Origin: Camelus dromedarius | Lineage: Eukaryota | Assembly: GCF_036321535.1 (NCBI RefSeq) | Contig: NC_087457.1 | Span: 31,930,001-31,994,000, forward strand | Reading direction: 5' to 3' | DNA: 64,000 bases | In this document: positions 1 to 25,800 of the stretch, piece after piece | Position numbering within the stretch: the stretch's first letter is position 1 | How the letters are laid out: every line of letters starts with the position of its first letter | The notes under the pieces: generated by a model | Told to the model about the DNA's origin: nothing | The model's input: the letters and a program-made list of their open reading frames with translations, nothing else | Database searches by the model: none | Program-made: the position numbers and the translations under genes

Positions 1-386
1 GTCCAGCAAATGGAAACAAGCATTTTTAAATACCCTCTTGTAGAGACTGTACACGGTTGGTGTTTTGCAGGAACTTCCATGGCTAAATGGGTTCCAATTA
101 GTTTTGGAGGGTGGACCGCAAGTTAGCGACGCCTCCTCCCACTGACAGGATTCTGCTTATTGGAAGCTCCTGATAAAACCACTGCCATTTCCCCTACTGG
201 CATATTCTTGCCGGATATGCAAGTAAGAGTGTAAAATCAAAGAAACTGAGAGAAAATGGCATCTGAAAAGTACTCTGCGTGGCCACATTGGTTGGAAGAG
301 TATGTGAATGATTCCCTCACACAGAAAGGGACTGAGGCAAGCCGGGGAGACGCAGGGGGGAGAAGAGTGGGACCAGGAGGGCTCAC

Positions 387-1687
387 CCCCACACAGCCAC
401 AGGGCTCCGACGCTTCCTTCCCGCGCTGCTGCGGCTGGGGTCCCTGGGGAAATCGCTGGAGGGGCTTCCTCTGCTGCTCTTGTCTGCAGAGCAAACCATG
501 TTCAGTGGCAGAAACCCACATTCCTCATCACAGTTGGGACAGACAACCCTGTGGCCCAGCCCTTTCCCAGTTTGGGGGTGACCCAGGGAGGGGACCCCGT
601 GCCTTGTGAAGACTGCCCCCTGCCTCATCTCTGTCCTCCCCCAACTCCAAGGGTCCCGCCAGGTTGTCCCAGGAGATCCTTTCTGTTCGTCTCTCCTGCT
701 TTGTGTCTCCCTGTGCAAAGCTGCAGGTGTGCTCCACGCCCTTAGTGACCTCAGGGCGCGGAATGAACCCCTGAGTGTGGCCCCGAGGAGGCAGCTCCTT
801 CCTCTGTCTCTCCAGGCTCTCTGTCTTTGCCTGGAGATGGCTCAGCACAGCGCAGAGGAAGAGCGGGACAGACTCCAATGTTTTCAGCCAGAGACGGGCC
901 ACCCCCCCCCCCCACACTGCTCACCTTGGCCTTTGACCCTCCTCCCTCGCGGCCGTGCTCGAGGTCCGCGGGGTCCACAGGCCCTGCAGCTTCCGTGGCT
1001 CCAGGTTCTCTTTCCCGCGTGTGGAGCCCAGGGGCTGGGGGGCTTGGGCCCCTTGCCAGCGCTTCATGGGGCACCTGAGGCTGCTTGCTCTGTGCCCAAA
1101 GGCTCCGCAGTCCTTGCACTTCACCTGTGGGTGGAGGAGAGGACGGTCAGCGCGTCCGCAGGAGTGACAGGCACGTTTCAGAAGTGCACATCAGGGCTCA
1201 GGGAGCTGAGCGCCGCTTCTGGAGAAAGGACAGCGCGCACGCCTCCCAGGTGCCGGGACACTCACGACCCCGTGGGGCAGCCTGAGCCTTAGTTAGGGAG
1301 CATCCAAGGGGGGAGGCCTGGAGGCCTAAGTGTGAACAGAAGGGCCCAGATGGAAACTCCTGGGAAAATACAGACTGGACAGGATATAGGTAGGAGCGGG
1401 GTGCTTCGTCCCAGGCTCCGAATGGCCCAGTCTGCCTGGGGGTGAGGCCCCGGGGCAGCTGGCTGTGGGTGGAATGGACAGGCGAGTCGTGGACCCAGAG
1501 CGGTCCAGGTCCACACCCTGTCTCTGGAGGCCGTGCCCTCCCTGCCGCCGCGCAGGCGCAGGCTTCCACTTACGCGGCAGTCCTCGCCCTGTGGCGGGGG
1601 CGGCGTCTCCTGCACCGGCTGGTACTTCTTCACTTCCTGGGCTTGAAAGGGTGTGCAAGGCCCACGCTGTGCGTGCCGACTGGCCAT
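387..1687 (-). CDS. FAM90A: FAM90A-family protein, 5' part. Coding exons 1687-1574, 1124-925, 483-387 (137 aa in window); last exon lies beyond the left edge
   Basis: Spliced frame MASRHAQ...PPPPQGEDCR|VKCKDCGAFGHRASSLRCPMKRW...GKENLEP...RPR|QEQQRKPLQRFP...EPCGCVG matches the FAM90A zinc-knuckle exon (KCKxCGAFGHxxxSxRCPMK) and its exon phases (0,2,0). All introns are GT-AG. An acceptor at 1736 precedes the ATG, implying upstream non-coding exon(s). Confidence 0.85.
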
Positions 1688-9720: not shown

Positions 9721-11310
9721 ATGGAGGCTGCTTCTCTCAACTGGGGTGATGCGTATCAGTTCAACGTCTTTCCAAAACTCAAATCTTCTCAGTCAGGTGC
9801 AGCTGGTGGTGATGTCCAGTGGGGACCCTCTCGACCTGAGAAGTCGTCCGCATCATCAGAGACAGCTTGCAACCAGCGCAGTGATCTTGCTCCTGTGTCA
9901 GCAGGGCTGGCTCCCGCCAAGAAACGTCTGAGTTGGAAGACCCCTTCCGTGGCGGGGGCTGGACTGCAGAACACGGGGAACACTTGCTACGTGAATGCAG
10001 CGCTGCAGTGTCTGACACACACGCCACCCCTGGCCAGCTCTATGCTGTCCCGGCAGCACTGGAAAGTCTGTCAGAAGCGGGCCTTCTGCATGGTGTGTGC
10101 TGTGCAAGCTCACGTGACCCGAGCCCTCCTTCATCCTGGAGAGGTGATCAAGCCCCGGCAGGACCTGGTCACCAGCTTCCACAGAGACCAGCAAGAAGAC
10201 GCCCATGAGTTTCTGATGTTCATGCTGAATGCCATGCAGCAGGTGTGCCTGAGCGGGTATGAGCTGTCAGATCGTCACTCTGAGGACACCTCCCTCGTCC
10301 CTCGCATCTTTGGAGGCTCCTGGAGATCTCAAATCCAGTGTCTCCACTGCCTAGGTGTTTCAGACACTTTTGACCCTTATCTAGACATCACCCTGGACAT
10401 CTCTGCAGCTCAGAGTGTGAACCAAGCTTTGAGAGAGTTGGTGAAGCCCGAACAGCTGGATGGTGAAAATTCCTACCACTGTAGTGTTTGTCTCAGGAAG
10501 GTGCCTGCTACCAAGAGGCTGACTTTGCACAGAGCCTCCAAGGTCCTCATCCTCGTGCTGAAAAGGTTCACAGATTTTACAGGCGGCAAAGTGGGTAAGA
10601 AAGTGTGCTACCCCGAGTGCCTTGACCTGAGCCCCTACATGTCTGAGCAGGAGGCAGGGCCCCTTGACTACGTGCTCTACGCCGTGCTGGTCCACTCGGG
10701 GTGGAGCTGTCACAGAGGACATTATTTCTGTTACGTCAAAGCTGGAAACGGCCAGTGGTACAGAATGGACGATGCCAAGGTAACCGCCTGTGACGGTACT
10801 TCTGCCCTGAGCCAAAGTGCCTATGTCCTCTTCTACGTCCAGAAGAGTGAGCTGGAGGGAGACAGCAAGGGAGTGTCCACAGGTCAGGAAGCAGCCTCCC
10901 TGGGGGCTGAGCCCACAGGCATGGCCGCCACCCACCAGGAGCCTGACAGAGACTCCAGTGTCAGAGTTCCTGGGTCAGAGGAGCAACTGGAGGACACAGA
11001 AACCCCAGAAGTCACCTTAGAGCAGTGGAGGTGCCTCCAAGAACTCAGCCGCCCTAAGCCTGAATTCACCCTCAGGAAGGTCGACTCTGACGTGCCCGCA
11101 GATGCAGTGGTGATTCACCAGTCGAAATATGGAGATAGGATGAGAATGAAACAGCCCGAACAGGACACCTACCAGCCCAGTCCTTCAGGCAGGGAGGCCT
11201 CAGCTCAGGGGCCAATAGTTATTGGCAGCATCCCTTGTCTCAGAGGGAAGCCCAGAGCCTCCAAGAAAAAGGGCAAGAAGAAGCAGAGGTCTGCGGGTGC
11301 CCTGCAGTAA
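9721..11310 (+). CDS. USP17L: Ubiquitin-specific peptidase 17-like (DUB/USP17L), single exon, 529 aa, catalytically intact
   Basis: Cys box GLQNTGNTCYVNAALQCL, QQEDAHEFL, His box VLVHSGWSCHRGHYF and WYRMDD are all present. The N-terminus (MEAASL...QFNVFPKL) and basic C-terminus fit USP17. The true start is the ATG at 9721, not the TTG at 9676. Confidence 0.95.
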   Translation: MEAASLNWGDAYQFNVFPKLKSSQSGAAGGDVQWGPSRPEKSSASSETACNQRSDLAPVSAGLAPAKKRLSWKTPSVAGAGLQNTGNTCYVNAALQCLTHTPPLASSMLSRQHWKVCQKRAFCMVCAVQAHVTRALLHPGEVIKPRQDLVTSFHRDQQEDAHEFLMFMLNAMQQVCLSGYELSDRHSEDTSLVPRIFGGSWRSQIQCLHCLGVSDTFDPYLDITLDISAAQSVNQALRELVKPEQLDGENSYHCSVCLRKVPATKRLTLHRASKVLILVLKRFTDFTGGKVGKKVCYPECLDLSPYMSEQEAGPLDYVLYAVLVHSGWSCHRGHYFCYVKAGNGQWYRMDDAKVTACDGTSALSQSAYVLFYVQKSELEGDSKGVSTGQEAASLGAEPTGMAATHQEPDRDSSVRVPGSEEQLEDTETPEVTLEQWRCLQELSRPKPEFTLRKVDSDVPADAVVIHQSKYGDRMRMKQPEQDTYQPSPSGREASAQGPIVIGSIPCLRGKPRASKKKGKKKQRSAGALQ

Positions 11311-11331
11311 GCTCTGAGGCGCATCCCTGCA

Positions 11332-11332
<1 letters not shown>

Positions 11333-11372
<40 letters not shown>
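11333..11372 (+). repeat. (AC)20 microsatellite just 3' of the USP17 stop
   Basis: Seen directly. Confidence 0.95.
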
Positions 11373-11376
<4 letters not shown>

Positions 11377-12689
11377 TTAGGGGTGAATAATCTGGACAGG
11401 GGAAGGGACTGTCTATCTGGAGTGTTCACGGGACGGGGTGTTCGGTGTCAACTTGTGACTGCTGAGCTCTGAGATGTGACTGTCCAGGCTGATGTCGCTG
11501 GGGAGGGTGAGATTCATTTCTGGGTCTGAGAAACCTCTGAGGACTTTCCACTTGTGCTGTGTTTGAAGAGTCATTTGCTGATGGGGTGTCTGTTTTTTGC
11601 AATTTTGATTCTCGTGAATCGTGCAGCCTGGAGGCGCCTCAGGTGCGCTCACGTCCACCCAGGCAAGGACAGTGTTTTCTTACCAGTTCTGGAAGCCCAG
11701 GCACCTCCCCTGCCTGCTGGCGCCCGCCTCCCCTGGGTCAGGCTCGCACAGAGAAGTCCACACATTCTGGGGACTGAGAGCTTTAGGTGGGAAATGGGCC
11801 ACCAGGTTTTGCAGGGTGGAAATCGTTCTGAGGATTTGGACCACCTGAGAACATGCCTGACAGTAATGACCAGGTTATCCATTCCTCACTTGACCTTTAC
11901 AATAACAAGGACACTTGTCCAAAGATATCTGTGGCTTGACTTCCATTAGACAAGATGTGTTGAAAACTATACAGATGCCAAACAACAGGAAAAAGGATTA
12001 AACACATCTGCAGGAATAAACCGCAAAGCACCTTGGACCTGATGAGCAGAGGACAGGTGTCAGCGGGGAGACTTTTCAAGAAGCTTGATTTGAGTCCCAA
12101 GGTAAAATGCAGAATGAAAGTGTTTATTGATAAATGTGCATGTTTTTACTCCCAGAAAATATAAATTGTTGAAAGTATGTATGTGTATTAAAATCCGTAA
12201 TTGCTTGGAAATGTGATTAACAGAGTACTACGTGTTTTTCAGGATGAGACTGGATCCAGTGTGATAGATCGCGTTGATGACCTGACATTGCTTAAGGGTG
12301 GCCTGCCCTGGAGAAGGAACTGGGAAGGAAAGTTTCCTGCAGTCGAAGCCTCAGGCTTCCTGGAAGCTGCATCGTGTCCAGCAGAGCTGGGAAGCACCCA
12401 CCTATCTGAGATCTGCTGACACCCAGAAGGATGGCTGAGAGGTTTCAGGTTGGTTTCCACTAAATTTTGGTCCTTGATTCTTACCTGAGAAAGGTAGTCT
12501 AACTGGAGAAATAGTTCGCGATGTGGCTTTACATGTCGAGTACGGATTCTTTAACTTGCAGTCATGTTTCTTAGGAGAGAGGATGATAAAACCCACCCTG
12601 TCAATTACTAAATGGTGGTTCAAATTCGTCTGGTTTGTAAGGGGCAGTGTCTGAGCGGTTATGGAACCTGGTGGTTTGCCAAATGCATT

Positions 12690-12990
12690 TAGAGGCTAAA
12701 TAATTTATTTTTCATGCTTTGTTCAAACATAGAAATTTCACACTTATTAGAAAATATTTAAAAAGTGGGTGTTGAAGAAAACTGATTAAAACAGTCCACA
12801 CCCTCAACAGTGTAGCCCCCAGGCTCAGAGAAAGAAAACAGTTTTCTAGGTTAAGTTGTAGTTGAAAATTGCCTCTCCTCATGTCAAATGGGATTCTTTG
12901 AATTTTGAGGAGGAAACATTTTTTATTTCAGATTTTCAAATATCATAACCAGAGGTTAGATGTCGAATTCTCACATCACCCTTTTATTTT
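12690..12990. repeat. FAM90A-upstream element, copy C (inverted relative to A and B)
   Basis: ttgaaaattgcctctcctcatgtcaaatggga matches the reverse complement of ~2150-2180 (ttgaaaattgcctcctctgatggcaaatggga); ttttcaaat follows in register. Confidence 0.65.
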
Positions 12991-13311
12991 GTGTGTCACA
13001 TGACCGGTTATCCATCTTTCTCTGATACTGCCTGTTGTGATAACCTTCACAGAGCCTCAAAATCCAGTCTTCCATGAGTGAAAATTGACATTCAGCCTTA
13101 ATAGACAGTCATCTGTCTTGTCTTTGCGGGGTTCCACTCTGGGAAGGGTACCCTTGCAGAGCATGGTAAATGTCTCATCATGTGACACCACTGGGTGTAA
13201 AGAAGGAAATGGTTATTGGTTTGATCAGTGGTCACTATCTCCACTTGGAGGAGAGGGTGCAGAAGGGACAGTCTGTGTGTTTATGTGACATCATTTTCCT
13301 TTTCATGATTC

Positions 13312-15560
13312 AGGATCTCTGAGATGAATGCCTGAGGCAGCCTGCCCTCGCGCTCCCAGGAGATGAGGCAGATGGCAGGCGGATACAGCAGACCTGCAGG
13401 TGAGGATGCCACATAGGGGCAGCAGGGGCCCTTGGGGGAGGGAGGCCCCTGGGTGGGCAGAGGCACGACTCCGCCCTGCAGGTCCCCTGGGGGAGCCGAC
13501 TGTAGTTCCTGCTGATTCACTGAGCGCCTGTTCTTCCAAGCACAGGGGCAGGCGAGGACTGGACCTGCGAAGTCCCCGATGGGGCCCTCCTCCCCCAGCC
13601 CTCGGGTCCAGTAAAGAGGAGACCCAAGGCCATAAGGTCATCGGAATGCAGGATCCTTTAACCAGACTGGAAGGAGGAACTCAGCAACGGTGAGCAGTGT
13701 GGAAGGGTTAGCATGTCCTAGTTTACTAAGACCCCAGAGAGGTGCCCTGTCTCTCCACCCCTATGCCACATGCACGGCCATCTCCAGGTAAGGACAGGCA
13801 GCCACGAGAGAAACATGCAAGGCATCTTGGTGCTCCCTGGGTCCACATCCTACCCTTGGAGAACCCCTAAGGGGAGAGAGCTGTTTCCATCTGGGAACTT
13901 GGCGCAGGACAGCAACAAAAACAATAGAACTAATGAATGGGGAAACCTGGGGAACTACCCGGAGTTGACGGGTGGATCTGAGATGAGGGGAGGGCAGTTG
14001 GGGCAAAGTTCACAGCACTTCAGTGTCCCCACACCCTAAACACCGAGTAAGACTGAGCCCCGGGATGCTTATCCGTACTGGGGACAGGGCACTGGGGCAC
14101 ATCCACTCATGGTGCTTTTTTTTTGCAGGCAGGAAAAGCAGCTGAGGAGGCCTTGTGATCCAGAAATAGACACAAGGAGACGCCGAGGGAGAAGGCAACA
14201 GAGCTGAAGGAGCCGACGGCATCAGGCGACTCTGACGGTGGGTCTCTGCTCGGTACCGGAGCCGTGTCCCCTCTGGGGAGCCTGCAATTGCTTCACCCAA
14301 ATGTGCATTTCCTAACGTTTCCTTCTGTCCCAGTGACTCCAGATTATTCGTGATCTTCAGCTGCCAACTTTCCTTCAATTATGTGTGTTCATGTGGTTAC
14401 TCGCAGGTCTGTCAATAGCCTGCTATTGGGGGCATATGGAATTGATTTAATCCGATGCCTCCACAACTGAGACTCAAAGGCAAGAATATCGTTTAAATTG
14501 TAATGAATATTCCCAAATCGTCCATCACACACATTAGCCATTAAACTGCCTTAAGAACAGCATTCGCTCCGACACTCCCCGAGGACTGAATGAAAATGCT
14601 CATTTCCCTTTAATTAACAAGAGACTGTATTTTAAAACATTTTATTTTCCAGTTTGGTGAGAATTATAAGAAGTTGATACTGTAATCTATTGTTTCCTCC
14701 TCATCACTGGGTTGGGTTTCTTTTCATATTACAATGAATTAAAACATACTAATTTTACTGTTAAATTTATTTTTTATGCTCCAAGCCCTTTAATTCGACT
14801 GATTTCCATTTTCCATTTGGTTGAGACCAATCTTAACACATATTCTGTGTGTGGTGTCCTGTCTTACAGCGCCCGCAGACCAGTGCCCATGCAAACACCG
14901 AGGAGACACTGTCCCAGACTGTGCTCACAGGCCGGCCACCTCCCACGGAATCTGCCCTGGGGTGGTCGTGGAGTGGAAATCACTGACTCCCCAGCCCACC
15001 GTCCTGTGCTTTGTCCAGGACCCTCCCTCACTGTCCAGCCCACAGACAGCAGACCTGATGTTGGCTCCCATGATTTCCCCAGACTGCCACCAACATACTT
15101 GGCCCCAGCCCTGCCCTCACACCCCAGGTCCAAGCCAAGTACCTGATTTGAAGTCAAAGCCAAGCCCCCATCTTGCCCCCGCCAGACTGAGCCAGGACTC
15201 CAAGCTCTGCATCCTGGCACCAGGTGAGGGATCTGCCTGGGTCCCCATCCACAATGCCAGAATCCCTCAAAAGGCCCTTTCCAGACCCTCAGAAAAGCAC
15301 TCAGAGGCCAGTTCAGGGAGGCTGTCCAGACTTTGTGGTCTCTGCTCAGCAGATGGACGTGGACGCAGGACATTGCCAGGTGACCTGAAGGATGCCTGCT
15401 CAGATGGCCAGCACTGACCTCCAGTGAGCGGACCTGATGACTGCCCAGGCCGGCGGGCTCCCCATCCTCCCCACCACCCAGCCTCGTTCCAGGCGAGCCC
15501 CTAGTGGTCTGTGCTAGGTTGACTCAAATGACTCTGAAGGACACTGTCTCTGTCCCATCG
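13312..15560 (+). pseudogene. Degenerate FAM90A paralog: exon remnants ~13312-13412, 13546-13689, 14129-14237, 14870-~15560
   Basis: Donor gtgagcagtgtgg (13690) is identical to the FAM90A donor at 924. Intron 13690-14128 (439 nt) is colinear with FAM90A intron 924-484 (441 nt). The 109-nt exon reads QEKQLRR...RRQQS* (TGA 14205). The last exon has RPVPMQTPRR and LSQDSKL...PG...PI...PQK. The zinc knuckle is deleted and there are frameshifts. Confidence 0.75.
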
Positions 15561-15755
15561 CTTTTCTCTGGGATGACTTTGTGCAGTCACTGGAGTGAGA
15601 AACTCTCCAGTAGCTGAGGCTCGACGTTCAGTCTCAAATACCTGGAGGAGACAGCGGACTGAGCAGGCGGAAGCACGGCAGCAGGCTCCGTCGGATGAAC
15701 AGGACTCCCCAGCCCCGGTGCACATGCAGAGAAGGACCCCTGTGCCACCCTGGGA

Positions 15756-15756
<1 letters not shown>

Positions 15757-15792
<36 letters not shown>
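15757..15792 (+). repeat. (AC)18 microsatellite
   Basis: Seen directly. Confidence 0.95.
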
Positions 15793-15794
<2 letters not shown>

Positions 15795-17099
15795 CCTGTT
15801 CTGACTACGTCCCTTTCGGGTGAATTCAAGATGGAATGTATGAAACTGGCATAGGGGAGGTTTTTAATTCAGTTAATTGTGTAATAAGCTGAGTAAAACT
15901 GGCATAAGTATTTAATTATAACTAAGGAGCTGTGAAATTAATCTGAACTTTGGGAAACTCTGGTTAAACTGAGCTCCGGGCTCTGTATCTTCTGAGAACT
16001 GCCCTGTCCTGACACAGAGTTCTGTTTCTGTGTGTTTTATAGAAACCAGTGCTTTTTAAAATTCAGTCTCACTGTAGAGTTGTGTTTTTAAAGCGTCTTT
16101 CAATGTTAATAAACCCTCAAAATATGACATATTGTGCCTACTTTTATTTCTAGACACCACTGGTCAATTTTATATTACTTTAATTTCTAAAGCCGCTACT
16201 CCTGATGTAAAGGTGGAACTCGGCCCTGAGGCTTACTAGAAATGCAGTCCCTTGGGTATCCAGAGCTCAACTGTCAGACACAGGGCTGGAGTCTCCCTGG
16301 TGGATTACACTAGATACCTGATCCTGTCCCCGTGACCCACTGGGCCAGTCAAGGTCCCTGCTGTGTCACCACCAGGCGTGGATGGAGACAGCCGGTTGGT
16401 GGGAAGCTGCGATGAGCCGTGTGGGAGGAGCTGCCGAGGAAGGCGAGACCCAGAGCACGGCTGCATCTCACCCACACGCCGTGGACTGCAGACTCAGATC
16501 TGTGTTCACAGCCACAGAAGGAAAACCAGAACTTCAGCAATGTACGAGATGTTTCAGCAACAGGGTTTACTGTTGAAGTATTTACAATTAATCATCCATC
16601 GACAAAGTTTTAATTTCTTAACAAAATTCTGCATTCAGTATTCCTACATCTTCACTATCTTGCATTCATAGGTCAGATTTTCCCTGTTAATAGTTTTCTC
16701 AAAATTCTCATTTGCTGAATTTTATGTTAAAAGGCTCTTTTAACATATTGATCACCCACTGTGGATCGGGTGCCCCTGAGGAAACCCAACTGTCACCCAG
16801 ATTTGGGTGACATGGTGACCAATGCTACAGGTTTCCCCCTTCCCCTGGCCCCTCAAACTTAATTTTCTAAACGTGGAATCTAGAGGTTTTCTCCACTTTA
16901 ATTTTAGGATCACTGTCTGCTCGCTGTGAGAACCTTAAAGTTGATTATGAAAAGAGAGATCACCAAAGACTTCCCTTCCTTCATGACGCGCGTACGGGGA
17001 ATCCACACGCGCACCACCCAGGCACGGGCACCCCCGGTGCTGCTCTGGGAACTAAGGGCTTCTCATGGACTCACTTCTCCAGGACGAGTTACCTGGTAC

Positions 17100-17624
17100 T
17101 CCGCAAGAGCCTTCGTCCTCACAGCCTGTTTCAGTCGTTGTTAAACTCAGCGGTTATTCCTCCACCGAGTTTCTTGCGCACGTCAAGCCCGTGCCTGGCT
17201 GAATGCTGGCCCCAGTGAGTACAGACCTAGGTTCTCCCAAGTGGAGCTTGCTCAAGCTGTTTAACTGCGAGTTGTACATGAAAGCACGTCCACCGTGATT
17301 GCAGGCCTGGGTTCTCCACGGCGCAAGCCCTCCAGCGTGTTTTCAGCTTAGAGCGCTCGCTAGAGGCTTCTACTTCCTCACATTTTCAGCATGAGTTCTC
17401 TCGCGTCATCTCTGCTCAGAACACCGACTGAAGGCTTCACCACACCGATGTCATACGTATGGATTCTCTCTCACATACACTTGCACACGTCAAATTCAGT
17501 AAGGATGACTGAAGCCTCTTCCACATTGATTAGTGTTTCTTCGATGTGTGAGTCCTCCGGTGCATTTAAATGTTAAAGCTATGGTGGCAGTCTTGTCCAC
17601 ATTCACTACCTTTATGACAGCACG
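17100..17624 (-). other. Decayed C2H2 zinc-finger repeats downstream of the ZNF stop codon
   Basis: Reverse strand reads ECGQDCHHSFNI*MHRRTHT, QCGRGFS, ENPYV*HRCGEAFSRCSEQR*RERTH, with stops and frameshifts. Confidence 0.6.
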
Positions 17625-21850
<4,226 letters not shown>

Positions 21851-24439
21851 CGTCAGTAACTCGGCTACCAGCGGTCTTTCTCCAGGTTTTCACTCGCAGA
21901 CAGTCCAAGCATTAAGCAGGCAAAGCTGAGGACAGTGAAAGAAGCCATGAGACTCCTGCCTTGCGCACAACTTGCAGACCAACATTCCGTGAAGCTCCAG
22001 CCTTCACCTGGGCATGGCGCCCGGCCTAACCAGCAAGCACGCGGTGCGCTCCAGGAGAAGCGCACAGAGGGCTCTCCTCCTCTCCCGGGGTCCAAAGTAG
22101 GACGGCGGTAACTACAGCCGCTAACAAAACACAGGAATACAGGCAGCTTACGGGCAGCAACACCGAGCGCGCTGAGCTTTACACCGCAGGTGGACTGGCC
22201 CACGGCGCCTGGAGCCACTCAGGTCCCTCCCTGATTCGGAACCGTAGTGATGCCGGGCGCGTGCCACGGGTAGGCTCTGGCTCCCTCCTGTAGGTAACCA
22301 CGGAATTCCTCAGACCACTTCTCCTGCCCTAGGTAAGAACTTCAGAGAGGCCACCACTAGCCCCTTGTCAGACGCTAGACTGCCCATCAGCTCCAGGAAC
22401 CACAGAGCCGTCAGCCTGGACAGGTTCACCCTCTGTCTGCCACTGAAGGCAGGACCAGGTCCAGGTCAAGGTTGTGCTAGAACAGCAGTGGAGAGAAGTC
22501 ACATTCCTCAAAGAGCCACGACTTTGAAATTTCAGGGTTGTGCAGCCCCAGACTTGCAGGGGTTGGGGAAGTCTGGAGACTGGGCTTCCTCAAGGATATA
22601 ACACGCAGCTGGAGTTTAGTCTGGTGAGGGCACCTCTCCCCAGCTTCCTTGACTAAAGCTAGAATGATCTCAGAACTCTTCATGCTTCCGATCAGGCATC
22701 GCCCCCTCCACTCAAGGATGGAAACCAGATCCCAAGTATCTTTGAAAGAGATGCCTTACAACAGTGGCCTCTCTCTGCAACACCCAGACATTCCAGTGAG
22801 CAAAGGACCAAAATCAACTGCCTTCAACTTGAATCAGGGAGTGGAATGATTCATATTCAAGGCCCTTAGGCAATATCAAAGCTCCACTAAGCCATTATAT
22901 ATGCCCCCTCCAAGGTCCTCAGTGTGCGTTCTGTGTAGGAACTGGTTTACAGTAGAGAACCTGACACATCTATGCAAACAGAATCCATACGTACCCTGCA
23001 AAGTGTCAGGCATACGTCTCCACAGTGCACCATGTTCAGCTAGCATCTTCCAAAGCTTACAAACCCTGCAGAGGGAGAAAACTGACTTTCATCTCCAAAC
23101 CCGAGGCCAGCCCACGGTTTCAGCTCTGAGCCCTTGCTCGCCTCCTCCATGACCACAAGGCCAGAAGATGGTTGGATGTCCTGCTTCAGCTGTGCCCTAA
23201 GCCCTTATCCCAGTGTTTTCCCTGTTAGGGCGCTTGGACTGAGCCCTGTGCCCCACACCCCTCAAACATCTGCCTCTACCTTGAGCTTGGAGGGACCCGA
23301 GGTACCTGCTCTTCAGAAAGTGAGAACAGCCCTCCCCCGGACACGGGCCCATACCTGGAGATTTGAATCCCCTCTGTAAAACACGAGAAGGAGGCTGTCT
23401 TCGGCATCACAGAGACAGGCGGTGACAGGGTGGTCCTCAAGCTCTGCTCTCTGCCTGTTGTGTGCGTGCACCGTGAGGAGGAGCTGGAATCCTCTAGGGT
23501 GAGTGGAGGGGGCTGAGGATCTAGAGGGTGATTTAAATGTCTGGGGCGTGATAGCTGGATTCTGGGCCCTGTTTCCTTTTGTGAGTTTCCTCTGGGAGTC
23601 ACAATAATCTCAAGTATTTAACTCGTATTTTCCAGAACATCACATTAAACTATCAAAATACATATTAAGAAGACCTAATTAGTAGCACTGGAAAACATGA
23701 GGTGGTCAGTAATGCAAAAGGTTCAGCAATTTATTCACGAAGAACAGCAGGGTTCTCTTCCAACTAATTCTGAGGACAGTCCAGCTCACCCTGGATCATT
23801 TTCAGAGACACCGTAAAGGGAATATATACTTGGTTGGAAACTTCAGTTCACAGCCCACTCAGTTAAGAGATCATATAAGGGCAGAAAGATGTTGAATATC
23901 GGACTGGTTTATCTAGGTTTTGATTGTTAATATAAAAAATTACCAATATCCTTACCAAGAACACACTGAAATAGTGTAAAATTATTTACTAAGCACTAAA
24001 GAATATTTTCAATACTTGATAAAGACTGGAAAACCACTGAGACCTCATCAGAATCTGCCACAATACAAGTAAAAGGGAATGTAAGCTGGAAATTTACAAA
24101 CAAAACTAATGAATCTGGGACCCACCCTTCCTTTGCCGGCAGCTCCTGCCGCTCATACCCCCTCCTCCTACTCTGTCCTGCTCCCCTCTCTGCTGATCCT
24201 CCTTCTATTTTCATTTACACCCCTGCTTCTTGCCCAGGTCACTCTCCTTCACTCTCACTGTCTTTCCAAGCCCATGGGATCCACTTCCCCATCTTCAATT
24301 TACCCCTGCTTTCTCTGTCTCACTCTGTCTCCCTGGTTCTCCCTTGACCTCTCTTTCCCCTTCCACCCCTGCCCCACCTCCGCATTCACAGGCCTAGAAT
24401 GAATACGCTCCAGCCCTGGAAGAGCACACTTCCCAGTGG

Positions 24440-25240
24440 GACGTCACTGGGAAGGTAAACACACCCTGGCAGGCACAGCCGTGACAGGGGATTTGGGGCC
24501 CTGGAGTGTCGCAGGACGCGGGCGGGTAAACGCCCCAGCACGGGGCTCGGGGGCCTCTCTGAGGGCGCGACTGGGAAGGGGAGGCCGGCGGGCAGCAGGG
24601 CTGGCTCAGGAATGACGCGAGGATGGGCGGGAGACTCAGGACAGGACTGGGGTCGGCAGAGCCGGAGGAGGAGGCGGCGCGGCGACCCGACGCCGCCCCC
24701 AAGGGTCGGAGAATACACCGCTCTGGGAGAGGGGGCCTGACGCGGCGCGGGGTGGGGAGCGGAGACGGTGAGAAGAACCAGGGCGGGAAGGTGGGAGCGG
24801 GGACCGGCCACGCAGCGATTTTACCGGAGACAGACGCGGGTCCGGGCCCGGCAGCACAGCGCCTCCCGACTAGGCGGGGATCCCCATGGGCGGGGCTGGC
24901 GCGGGCGGGGGCTGTAAGGTCCCCGGGGCCGCGGACGCCGGGGGTGGAGGACGCGGGGCTGGGGGCATCGACGCGCGACTCTGAAGGAGAAATACTGAAA
25001 CTCACTCCCGGAGACGGGACTCACTCCCGGAAACTGCTTCCGGGTAGGCAGGAAACGGAGAGCTCGAGTGGGGCGGGGCCTGGTGGGTGTGGGCGTGGCA
25101 CCCCCGCCCCACCCCCGGGGCGTTTCCGGTCCGGAAGTGCCGCCGCCCGTGGAAGTGGAGTCTCCCGTCTCCCGCCGCGCCCGCGGGAGCCTGTTGGGCG
25201 TCCGCCCTCCTTCAGGTTAAACGTTGACGCTGCTTTAATG
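24440..25240. promoter_or_regulatory. CpG island, probable promoter and first non-coding exon of the KRAB-ZNF
   Basis: High GC and CpG density; ETS/GABP motif CCGGAAGT at 25131-25138 with neighbouring TTCCGG motifs; minus-strand GTGAGT donors at 25005 and 25024. Confidence 0.75.
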
Positions 25241-25800
25241 TAAAAGCTTGGAGTTGTGAGGCCACTTATATTGAATGCGGAGATCTTTCCTTCTCAAAAC
25301 ATGGAAAAGATTTAAGTCCAAAACCCTTTTGAGGAGCGTGTCACACGGGTCCTGTGACACCGTTAGGACAAGTGTGAGGGACGCCCTGCGCCTTGTGAGA
25401 CGAGGAAGAGGGAGCTCGGCGTCTGTCTGTCCAGGCAGGACGAAGAAGCGCGGCTTGCTCACGGCGGGACAGAGCGCCTGCAAGTCCGAAGGCCTCAGAA
25501 TGAAGCCTGCCCTGCCAGCACCTCGGCCCTGGACCTCCCCGACTCCAGGGCTGAGCCGCCTGGTCTGTGGTATTTGGCTGTGGCAGCACGAACTAAGACA
25601 GATTTCCATAGTGAATAAAGACCTGGGTCATTCCACCAGGTGAGGAACCACGACCAGGTGCTGGCTGACGGGAAAGGATCGTAGAGCCAACAGCGGAAGA
25701 GGTAGGTTTACATCCCAGCTGTGGCCCTGTGACCAGTTACAGCCGTGACTGTGTGGTTGTTACGAGTGCTTCCTCCTTATTCCGTTATGATGTGTGTGTA

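What the first reader, a model, noticed from the sequence alone, without database searches (positions are those of the whole stretch)
13312..15560. Hidden inverted FAM90A paralog with a destroyed zinc knuckle; USP17 is sandwiched between divergent FAM90A copies
Seen: although absent as a recognisable ORF, four exon remnants are colinear with FAM90A. ATGGCAGG at 13372 matches ATGGCCAG at 1687; the acceptor at 13545 matches that at 1125; the donor gtgagcagtgtgg is identical; the introns are 439 versus 441 nt. A 109-nt exon carries TGA at 14205, intron 3 resembles window 386-1, and the last exon has FAM90A-like peptides. The GAFGH core of the knuckle is deleted and the exon-1 donor appears lost, yet the downstream splice sites look intact. 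Inference: an old inverted duplication showing FAM90A birth-and-death outside primates; it may still be transcribed as a spliced lncRNA or as read-through from USP17.
Basis: partly seen in the sequence, partly recalled or inferred. Interest (0 to 1): 0.7.

Follow-up and report, generated by a model that had tools for sequence, protein, structure and literature searches.

The report
Decayed, still-spliced FAM90A pseudogene beside USP17

Summary
Window 13314 to about 15750 (+) is colinear, exon by exon and intron by intron, with the FAM90A gene on the minus strand at 1-1687. Colinearity runs from the 5'UTR acceptor and the ATG to the stop codon and 3'UTR.

Similarity is low, 58-69% DNA identity. 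It is still about twice the best score of any other stretch of the window. A FAM90A family profile hits the last exon at E = 3e-8.

The coding capacity is gone:
- Exon 2 is 144 nt instead of 200, and the zinc-knuckle core is deleted.
- Exon 3 has an in-frame TGA at 14205-14207.
- The last exon needs several frameshifts (five to nine, by guide) and has in-frame stops, one in every guide.
- The 198-aa ORF there is a chance mosaic of frames.

RNA contigs from camel reproductive-tract libraries carry the predicted GT..AG junctions 13689>14129 and 14237>14870. They also show a new upstream exon (12243-12448) spliced to 13314.

The copy is not a recent camel duplicate. Orthologous, also decayed copies lie near USP17 in white rhinoceros and pygmy sperm whale, so the duplication predates the Cetartiodactyla-Perissodactyla split. 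Between orthologues, exons are no better conserved than introns.

Verdict: an ancient, unprocessed, transcribed FAM90A pseudogene. FAM90A genes outside primates are already widely annotated. The scan's other notes on this stretch (s1-193385, s1-193397) are on this same window, not on other DNA.

The parts
12243..12448 (+). Upstream non-coding exon of the pseudogene transcript. It has an acceptor cag|G at 12242/12243 and a donor CAG|gttggt at 12448/12449.
   Evidence: An RNA contig in X15 lies on 12240-12431, and its first 2 letters do not fit the window. An X16 contig joins 12443 (+5) to 13309 (+5) across a GT..AG gap of 865 nt. Sequence read.
13314..13689 (+). Composite exon seen in RNA. It holds the 5'UTR acceptor (AG at 13312-13313), the ATG remnant at 13372, the exon-1 remnant 13372-13452, the shrunken intron 1 (13453-13545, 93 nt) and the exon-2 remnant 13546-13689 with the knuckle core deleted.
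   Evidence: Contigs 13309-13444, 13487-13637 and 13543-13688 cover it without a joint. The five-way alignment shows the ATG, the weakened donor GTGGGC at 13453, a roughly 330-nt intron-1 deletion shared with Kogia, and the camel-specific knuckle deletion. Exon 2 is 56 nt shorter than in copy 1, which shifts the frame.
13690..14128 (+). Intron 2, 439 nt, homologous to copy-1 intron 2 (441 nt).
   Evidence: GT..AG joint 13688/9>14128/9 in an X15 contig. It aligns to window 924-484 on the reverse complement.
14129..14237 (+). Exon-3 remnant, 109 nt, with TGA at 14205-14207 in the ancestral frame.
   Evidence: It reads RQEKQLRRP where copy 1 reads RQEQQRKPL, in the same frame, and then hits the stop. 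It is bounded by both RNA joints.
14238..14869 (+). Intron 3, 632 nt, homologous to copy-1 intron 3.
   Evidence: GT..AG joint 14236/7>14869/70 in X15 and X16. It aligns to window 386-8 and to L008 7658-8011.
14870..15750 (+). Last exon. The decayed FAM90A C-terminal coding region runs from 14870 to the ancestral stop at 15596-15598. Homologous 3'UTR follows. RNA continues past 15750, and the next AATAAA is at 16108.
   Evidence: Family profile E = 3.2e-8. A frameshift-aware alignment to the family consensus scores 276, with nine frameshifts and stops at 15388 and 15427; other guide proteins need fewer. Scores with real proteins are 179 and 160, against control maxima of 128 and 90. DNA pieces match the copy-1 last exon and 3'UTR. 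Long RNA contigs cover it in all four runs. AATAAA position.
1..1687 (-). Intact FAM90A gene (copy 1, cut by the window start). Exon 1 is 1687-1574, exon 2 is 1124-925 with the CCHC knuckle, and exon 3 is 483-387.
   Evidence: Pfam zf-CCHC_6 at 1.3e-22 on exon 2. The Camelus ferus orthologue, at 98.95% DNA identity, is annotated as 'putative protein FAM90A22P', 385 aa.
9721..11310 (+). USP17-like gene lying between the two FAM90A copies.
   Evidence: Pfam UCH at 2.3e-57. An identical protein is named 'ubiquitin carboxyl-terminal hydrolase 17-like protein 6 [Camelus ferus]'.

Best explanation
This is an unprocessed (intron-containing) pseudogene of the FAM90A zinc-knuckle family. It descends from a second FAM90A gene that already existed beside USP17 before camels, whales and rhinoceroses diverged.

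In the camel lineage it lost the knuckle-coding core of exon 2. It also gained a stop in exon 3 and several frameshifts and stops in the last exon, so no FAM90A protein can be made.

Its promoter region and its splice sites still work. RNA polymerase II transcripts are made in reproductive tissue and spliced at the ancestral sites, preceded by at least one non-coding upstream exon. The shrunken intron 1 is often or always retained.

Shown: the homology, the lesions, the splicing and the orthologues. Inferred: that the RNA has no function of its own and persists as a by-product of an active chromatin neighbourhood.
For: - Colinear homology to copy 1 across exons, introns, stop codon and 3'UTR, well above the window's background.
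- Family-profile hit on the last exon, E = 3.2e-8. Apart from copy 1's own exons, it is the only significant hit among 2123 six-frame pieces.
- Lesions: exon 2 is 56 nt shorter with the knuckle core gone. TGA at 14205. Several frameshifts plus stops in the last exon, with scores above controls.
- No protein in 5.8 billion clusters matches the 181-aa ORF. The newest camel annotation calls no gene there.
- The longest ATG ORFs of the spliced RNA are 120 and 119 aa, and both are frame mosaics.
- Three GT..AG joints on the + strand in RNA contigs. The last exon is held by RNA runs of two studies.
- Age. AU test rejects a sister relation with camel copy 1, p = 0.008. The candidate keeps about 74 aa that all cetartiodactyl copy-1-type proteins lack. 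Rhino and Kogia loci near USP17 match the candidate far better than copy 1. DNA trees give ((camel, Kogia), rhino) at 99-100% support, apart from the copy-1 lineage.
- Neutral decay. Camel-rhino identity is 0.66-0.75 in exons and 0.64-0.78 in introns.
Against: - All retained splice sites are still canonical and in use after a long period of apparently neutral change. The same sites are also intact in the rhino and whale copies, which could hint at selection on the transcript.
- The RNA evidence comes from assembled contigs. It gives no strand, level or transcript ends, and intronic contigs show that pre-mRNA or DNA is also present in these libraries.
- No lesion is clearly shared between camel and rhino. 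The gene may therefore have stayed functional long after the duplication, and the time of death in camels is not fixed.
Confidence: 0.78

Rival explanations
1. It is a functional long non-coding RNA derived from the dead gene. Selection would keep its promoter and splice architecture, for example to modulate the neighbouring USP17 or KRAB zinc-finger genes in germ line or early embryo.
For: It is spliced at four retained ancestral sites and is found in RNA runs of two studies of reproductive tissue. The homologous splice sites are also canonical in rhino, and for the part that survives, in Kogia.
Against: Exon sequence is no better conserved than intron sequence between orthologues. Kogia has lost intron 3 and most of the last exon. 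No expression data are available outside camels.
Confidence: 0.13
2. It still encodes a short protein without a knuckle. Candidates are the 120-aa ORF at 13406-14207 and the 119-aa ORF at 15058-15417, the latter keeping the conserved QDSKL..APG..VPI motif.
For: Both ORFs exist in the spliced RNA. The second contains about 60 codons in the ancestral frame.
Against: No homologous protein of comparable length exists in public data. The ORFs are mosaics of ancestral and shifted frames. The opposite strand has a 169-aa ORF in the same stop-poor sequence. The 119-aa ORF lies behind many upstream ATGs. Exon divergence equals intron divergence.
Confidence: 0.04
3. It is a recent camel-lineage inverted duplication of copy 1 that decayed quickly.
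For: The inverted orientation around USP17 looks like a local inverted duplication.
Against: K2P distance to copy 1 is 0.31-0.49. AU test p = 0.008 against a sister relation. It retains a segment lost in all cetartiodactyl copy-1-type proteins. Orthologues exist in rhino and whale.
Confidence: 0.02
4. The resemblance is chance, with no homology.
For: Standard blastn finds nothing.
Against: Background and shuffle controls, the family-profile hit and the colinear hits to the full gene.
Confidence: 0.01

Closest known systems
FAM90A family (Pfam PF15288 zf-CCHC_6). Many human members carry pseudogene names such as FAM90A2P-FAM90A25P (my own knowledge; Bosch et al. 2007 was not held in the library).
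   Same: Same gene structure: a 5'UTR acceptor, three introns at homologous places, and a C-terminal conserved region. It also sits in the same kind of neighbourhood, with USP17, a KRAB zinc-finger gene and beta-defensins (PMC2874809).
   Different: It has no zinc knuckle and no open reading frame. It belongs to a lineage separate from the annotated camel FAM90A (copy 1), which split off before Cetartiodactyla and Perissodactyla diverged.
Transcribed unprocessed (duplicated) pseudogenes, i.e. pseudogene-derived lncRNAs in mammals
   Same: It keeps introns and splice sites, carries disabling mutations, evolves neutrally and is still transcribed.
   Different: Nothing in kind. What stands out is its age (orthologues in three mammalian lineages) combined with continued use of the ancestral splice sites.
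Camel copy 1, annotated 'putative protein FAM90A22P [Camelus ferus]' (P0128)
   Same: Paralogue in the same window. All exons and introns can be aligned.
   Different: Copy 1 is intact: 385 aa with the knuckle present. It lacks about 85 aa in the last exon, of which the pseudogene still shows about 74 aa in decayed form.

Membership tests
FAM90A gene family (by descent) | Homology of the C-terminal region to FAM90A proteins | tested here: met
   A profile of 26 FAM90A proteins hits the six-frame piece 14803-15414 at E = 3.2e-8. The frameshift-aware alignment to the consensus scores 276, and scores with real proteins exceed the controls.
FAM90A gene family (by descent) | Conserved exon-intron structure | tested here: met
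   Acceptors and donors of exons 2, 3 and 4 and the 5'UTR acceptor are at homologous places. Intron 2 is 439 nt against 441 nt.
FAM90A protein (functional member) | CCHC zinc knuckle, Pfam PF15288 | tested here: not met
   The knuckle core is deleted, and the first two Cys codons now read G and W. The family profile gives only E = 6.9 on the exon-2 piece.
FAM90A protein (functional member) | Continuous open reading frame | tested here: not met
   There is a net 56-nt loss in exon 2, a TGA at 14205, and frameshifts plus in-frame stops in the last exon.
Unprocessed pseudogene | Introns retained and colinear with a parent or paralogue | tested here: met
Unprocessed pseudogene | No purifying selection on exons | tested here: met
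   Between the camel and rhino orthologues, exon identity is 0.66-0.75 and intron identity 0.64-0.78. The camel-Kogia comparison is similar.
Transcribed pseudogene / lncRNA | Spliced RNA from the locus | tested here: met
   Three GT..AG joints in RNA contigs of X15 and X16. The last exon is present in RNA runs of two studies.
Transcribed pseudogene / lncRNA | A function of the RNA itself | not testable with these tools
   No perturbation or cross-species expression data were available.
USP17 read-through transcript | RNA that links the USP17 3' end to the pseudogene exons | tested here: inconclusive
   Contigs cover 11400-11909 and then 12240-12448, with nothing between them. The exon at 12243 starts at an acceptor, so a further 5' exon exists, but its place is unknown.

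The most novel reading that the evidence does not exclude
The dead FAM90A copy has been kept for more than about 75 million years as a spliced non-coding transcription unit. Its splice sites are still canonical in camel and rhinoceros, and in what remains of the whale copy. It would act in the germ line or early embryo on the neighbouring USP17 / KRAB zinc-finger genes.
Probability: 0.1. Interest if true: 0.55.

Novelty: new member of a known kind. Interest (0 to 1): 0.3.

Why it matters
It adds an unannotated transcribed pseudogene to the camel USP17 / FAM90A / zinc-finger / defensin cluster. It also shows that this cluster held two FAM90A lineages before cetartiodactyls and perissodactyls split, one of which decayed in camel, whale and rhinoceros. 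This helps gene annotation: it explains a spurious 206-aa minus-strand gene model and several fused gene models in public annotation. It also helps reconstruct the birth-and-death history of the family. It does not reveal a new kind of element or mechanism.

Tried and rejected
- Standard blastn (word 9 or 11) found no similarity between the two copies. Relaxed scoring with background controls was needed.
- Pfam scans of the 198-aa ORF and of its antisense ORF gave nothing.
- A search of 5.8 billion protein clusters with the ORF gave nothing. That search only sees proteins of 0.55-1.75 times the query length.
- The 198-aa ORF as a real coding region was rejected. Only its middle part is in the ancestral frame, and the opposite strand is equally open.
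- Orthology with the 'FAM90A27P-like' clade was left open. The protein tree places the conceptual translation near Afrotheria, rabbit and fox sequences (SH-aLRT 85). The row has a long branch, and the elephant and arctic-fox loci have no USP17 or zinc-finger gene within 10 kb.
- No lesion in the last exon is shared between camel and rhino. A 4-nt gap in exon 2 that MAFFT showed in all three orthologues did not hold up when read by eye, so I do not use it.
- A bat (Sturnira) has an intact FAM90A 4.8 kb downstream of USP17 on the same strand. By sequence it groups with the copy-1 lineage, so position alone does not define orthology.
- Control segment 24550 (minus strand) scored 128 with one proline-rich guide protein, but has no profile hit and no DNA hit. 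I judged this to be base composition.
- Literature searches gave context only.
- The loci fetched from other camel assemblies cover the two masked N stretches of the window. I neither printed nor used those positions.

Full report
**Where the window comes from.** The USP17-like ORF at 9721-11307 is found letter for letter in three camel assemblies. One of them (GCA_036321535.1, locus L006) is 100% identical to the window over 20 kb. The identical protein is named 'ubiquitin carboxyl-terminal hydrolase 17-like protein 6 [Camelus ferus]'. By my recollection GCA_036321535.1 is a dromedary assembly. The fetched loci also cover the two masked N stretches of the window. I did not print or use those positions.

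**Gene order.**
- An intact FAM90A gene lies on the minus strand at 1-1687 and is cut by the window start. I call it copy 1. Exon 2 carries a zf-CCHC_6 knuckle (Pfam 1.3e-22).
- USP17 lies at 9721-11310 on the plus strand (UCH 2.3e-57).
- The candidate lies at about 13314-15750 on the plus strand.
- A KRAB C2H2 zinc-finger gene lies on the minus strand from 17391.

**Checking the observation.** Ordinary blastn finds no similarity between the candidate and copy 1.
- With +1/-1 scoring, a 980-column alignment appears: 13669-14611 against 946-8 on the reverse complement, 57% identity, 65 bits.
- The same search against every other 2.6-kb tile of the window gives at most 33 bits. One further hit, of 35 bits, is the colinear exon-2 acceptor of the candidate itself.
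- A global alignment lines up the exon-2 acceptor, the identical donor gtgagcagtgtgg, blocks inside intron 2, the exon-3 acceptor and intron 3.

I then fetched the full copy-1 gene from Camelus ferus (L008, 98.95% identical to the window; protein P0128, 'putative protein FAM90A22P', 385 aa). Used as a query against the whole window, it finds only itself and the candidate.
- The candidate matches in three colinear pieces: 13669-14959 (E = 2e-26), 15192-15423 (E = 1e-14) and 15585-15733 (E = 2e-10).
- The last piece includes the ancestral stop codon at 15596-15598 and 3'UTR.

- Exon 2 is 13546-13689 (144 nt against 200).
- Intron 2 is 439 nt against 441.
- Exon 3 is 14129-14237 (109 nt against 97).
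- Intron 3 is 632 nt.

**Protein-level evidence.** A phmmer search with copy 1's exon-2 peptide returned 75 FAM90A-like proteins. Public names confirm the family in bovids, whales, pig, camel, equids, carnivores, bats, primates, tree shrew, rabbit, rodents, shrews, Afrotheria and Xenarthra.

I built a profile from 26 of these proteins and searched all 2123 six-frame pieces of the window. It gave four significant hits:
- copy 1 exon 2, E = 5.6e-34;
- the candidate's last-exon piece 14803-15414, E = 3.2e-8;
- copy 1 exon 3, E = 4.9e-6;
- copy 1 exon 1, E = 2.8e-5.

The match in the candidate covers the family's conserved motif around QDSKL..APG..VPI.

**The lesions.**
- *Exon 2.* It is 56 nt shorter than in copy 1, which shifts the frame. 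The stretch coding for C-G-A-F-G-H-R-A-S-S-L is gone, and the first two knuckle cysteines now read G and W.
- *Exon 3.* In the ancestral frame it reads RQEKQLRRP, where copy 1 reads RQEQQRKPL. It then runs into TGA at 14205-14207.
- *Last exon.* A frameshift-aware protein-to-DNA alignment follows FAM90A homology from about 14860 to 15570 through all three frames. The guide proteins need 2 to 10 shifts and the family consensus needs nine. Recurrent shifts fall near 15076-15099, 15141, 15254-15263, about 15271-15345 and 15455-15473. Most guides also show an in-frame stop at 15388.
- *Controls.* Scores of 179 and 160 with two real proteins compare with control maxima of 128 and 90 on other GC-rich segments, and 99 and 96 on the reversed sequence.
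- *The 198-aa ORF at 14821-15417.* It is a chance mosaic. Only its middle part is in the ancestral frame, and the opposite strand carries a 169-aa ORF in the same stop-poor sequence.
- *Annotation.* No public protein of comparable length matches it. The newest camel annotation calls no gene there, while an older one has a 206-aa minus-strand model across 13281-20146.

**Transcription.** RNA libraries labelled 'reproductive system metagenome', from two studies, hold 34-73% of the sampled words of the locus.

I laid the contigs of four of these runs on 11400-15750. They gave three GT..AG joints on the plus strand:
- 13688/9 > 14128/9 in X15;
- 14236/7 > 14869/70 in X15 and X16;
- 12443 (+5) > 13309 (+5) in X16.

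The third shows a non-coding upstream exon, 12243-12448, spliced to the acceptor at 13313/13314. That acceptor is homologous to the 5'UTR acceptor of copy 1 and of the rhino and whale copies.

- The contig on the upstream exon starts at an acceptor, with two letters that do not fit the window. So at least one further 5' exon exists, and its place is unknown. Read-through from USP17 is therefore neither shown nor excluded.
- Contigs at 13309-13444, 13487-13637 and 13543-13688 run through the old intron 1 without a joint. It is retained in at least part of the RNA.
- Intronic contigs are also present, so pre-mRNA or DNA is in these libraries. Contigs give neither strand nor level.
- Several differences from the window in these contigs are the Camelus ferus alleles, so the animals sampled were probably of Bactrian type.
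- The spliced RNA has no ATG ORF longer than 120 aa.

**Age and orthology.**
- *Distance.* The K2P distance to copy 1 is 0.49 in the intron-dominated block, 0.43 in the last-exon core and 0.31 at the 3' end.
- *Protein tree.* The conceptual translation (X at each break) falls outside the well-supported cetartiodactyl clade that holds camel copy 1. An AU test rejects a sister relation with camel copy 1 (p = 0.008). It does not reject a position next to the whole cetartiodactyl clade (p = 0.086).
- *Indel.* All cetartiodactyl copy-1-type proteins have 56 residues where most other mammals have 130-144. The candidate still carries about 74 residues of the missing segment.
- *White rhinoceros (L013).* A plus-strand sequence 3 kb downstream of USP17 matches the candidate at 348 + 298 bits, but copy 1 at only 182 bits. 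A second, copy-1-like FAM90A lies further on, on the minus strand.
- *Pygmy sperm whale (L012).* An inverted remnant 7 kb downstream of USP17 matches the candidate at 332 bits, against 82 bits for copy 1. It has lost intron 3 and most of the last exon.
- *DNA trees.* They give ((camel candidate, Kogia), rhino) with 99-100% support, separate from camel copy 1, the rhino minus-strand copy and a bat gene.
- *Shared deletion.* Camel and Kogia share a roughly 330-nt deletion in intron 1.

The duplication therefore predates the split of Cetartiodactyla and Perissodactyla.

The rhino copy is also broken. It has lost the first knuckle cysteine, has a stop in exon 2, and has three frameshifts and three stops in the last exon. 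None of its lesions clearly coincides with a camel lesion. The deletion of the knuckle core happened on the camel lineage, after it split from whales.

Between the orthologues, exons are no better conserved than introns. Camel against rhino gives 0.66-0.75 in exons and 0.64-0.78 in introns. The two Camelus species differ at 16 of 3590 positions and by no indel, so all lesions are shared within the genus.

**Interpretation.** The locus is an ancient, unprocessed, transcribed FAM90A pseudogene.
- Shown: the homology, the lesions, the splicing and the orthologues.
- Inferred: that the RNA has no function of its own.
- The one feature that keeps a functional-lncRNA reading alive is the state of the splice sites. 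All retained sites are canonical and in use in camel, and canonical in rhino and in what remains of the whale copy. The lack of exon conservation and the large deletion in the whale speak against that reading.

**Novelty.** FAM90A genes outside primates, and FAM90A next to USP17 and defensins in several mammals, are already on record (PMC2874809). Two things are new. The first is this particular unannotated pseudogene and its transcript. The second is the inference that two FAM90A lineages stood beside USP17 before the two ungulate orders diverged. That makes it a new member of a known kind. Interest is modest.

Noticed in passing
window 13281-20146 (minus strand), seen as L005 13561-20426: An older camel annotation (GCA_000803125.3) carries a 206-aa gene model with no Pfam hit on the minus strand, across the pseudogene and the zinc-finger gene. 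The newest annotation has no such gene. It is probably a spurious model built on the stop-poor antisense ORF at 14864-15373.
   Followed up: partly
L008 6001-6174 (copy 1, = window about 1687-1515): The public model of copy 1 (P0128) uses a downstream exon-1 donor. This adds 19 residues (VSGSLHLRGGREGAASRDR) that are absent from the family consensus. The canonical donor CGC|gtaagt at window 1574/1573 fits the family better.
   Followed up: partly
proteins P0016, P0021, P0093 (public models): Three gene models fuse neighbouring genes of the cluster: USP17 plus a FAM90A knuckle in Sturnira, a FAM90A knuckle plus a KRAB zinc finger in Desmodus, and a knuckle plus KRAB in Budorcas. This is either co-transcription across the cluster or an annotation artefact.
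   Followed up: partly
alignment (cetartiodactyl FAM90A proteins): All copy-1-type FAM90A proteins of camel, pig, ruminants and whales share a loss of about 85 aa in the first part of the last exon, relative to most other mammals.
   Followed up: partly
L013 1-516, 14629-17436 (+) and 19363-21085 (-): White rhinoceros has a beta-defensin upstream of USP17 and two convergent FAM90A copies downstream. The nearer copy is the decayed orthologue of the camel pseudogene. The farther one is copy-1-like and looks intact in its last exon.
   Followed up: partly
L012 12988-13618: Pygmy sperm whale has a partial second USP17 copy directly downstream of the complete one.
   Followed up: no
window 11330-11376 and 15755-15793: (CA)n microsatellites lie just after the USP17 stop and in the pseudogene's 3'UTR. 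They are the only ordinary blastn match between the two regions.
   Followed up: no
window 24394-25243: A GC-rich stretch has roughly 200-aa ORFs on both strands and a raised frameshift-aware score (128) with one proline-rich FAM90A guide. It has no family-profile hit and no DNA hit, so this is probably base composition.
   Followed up: partly
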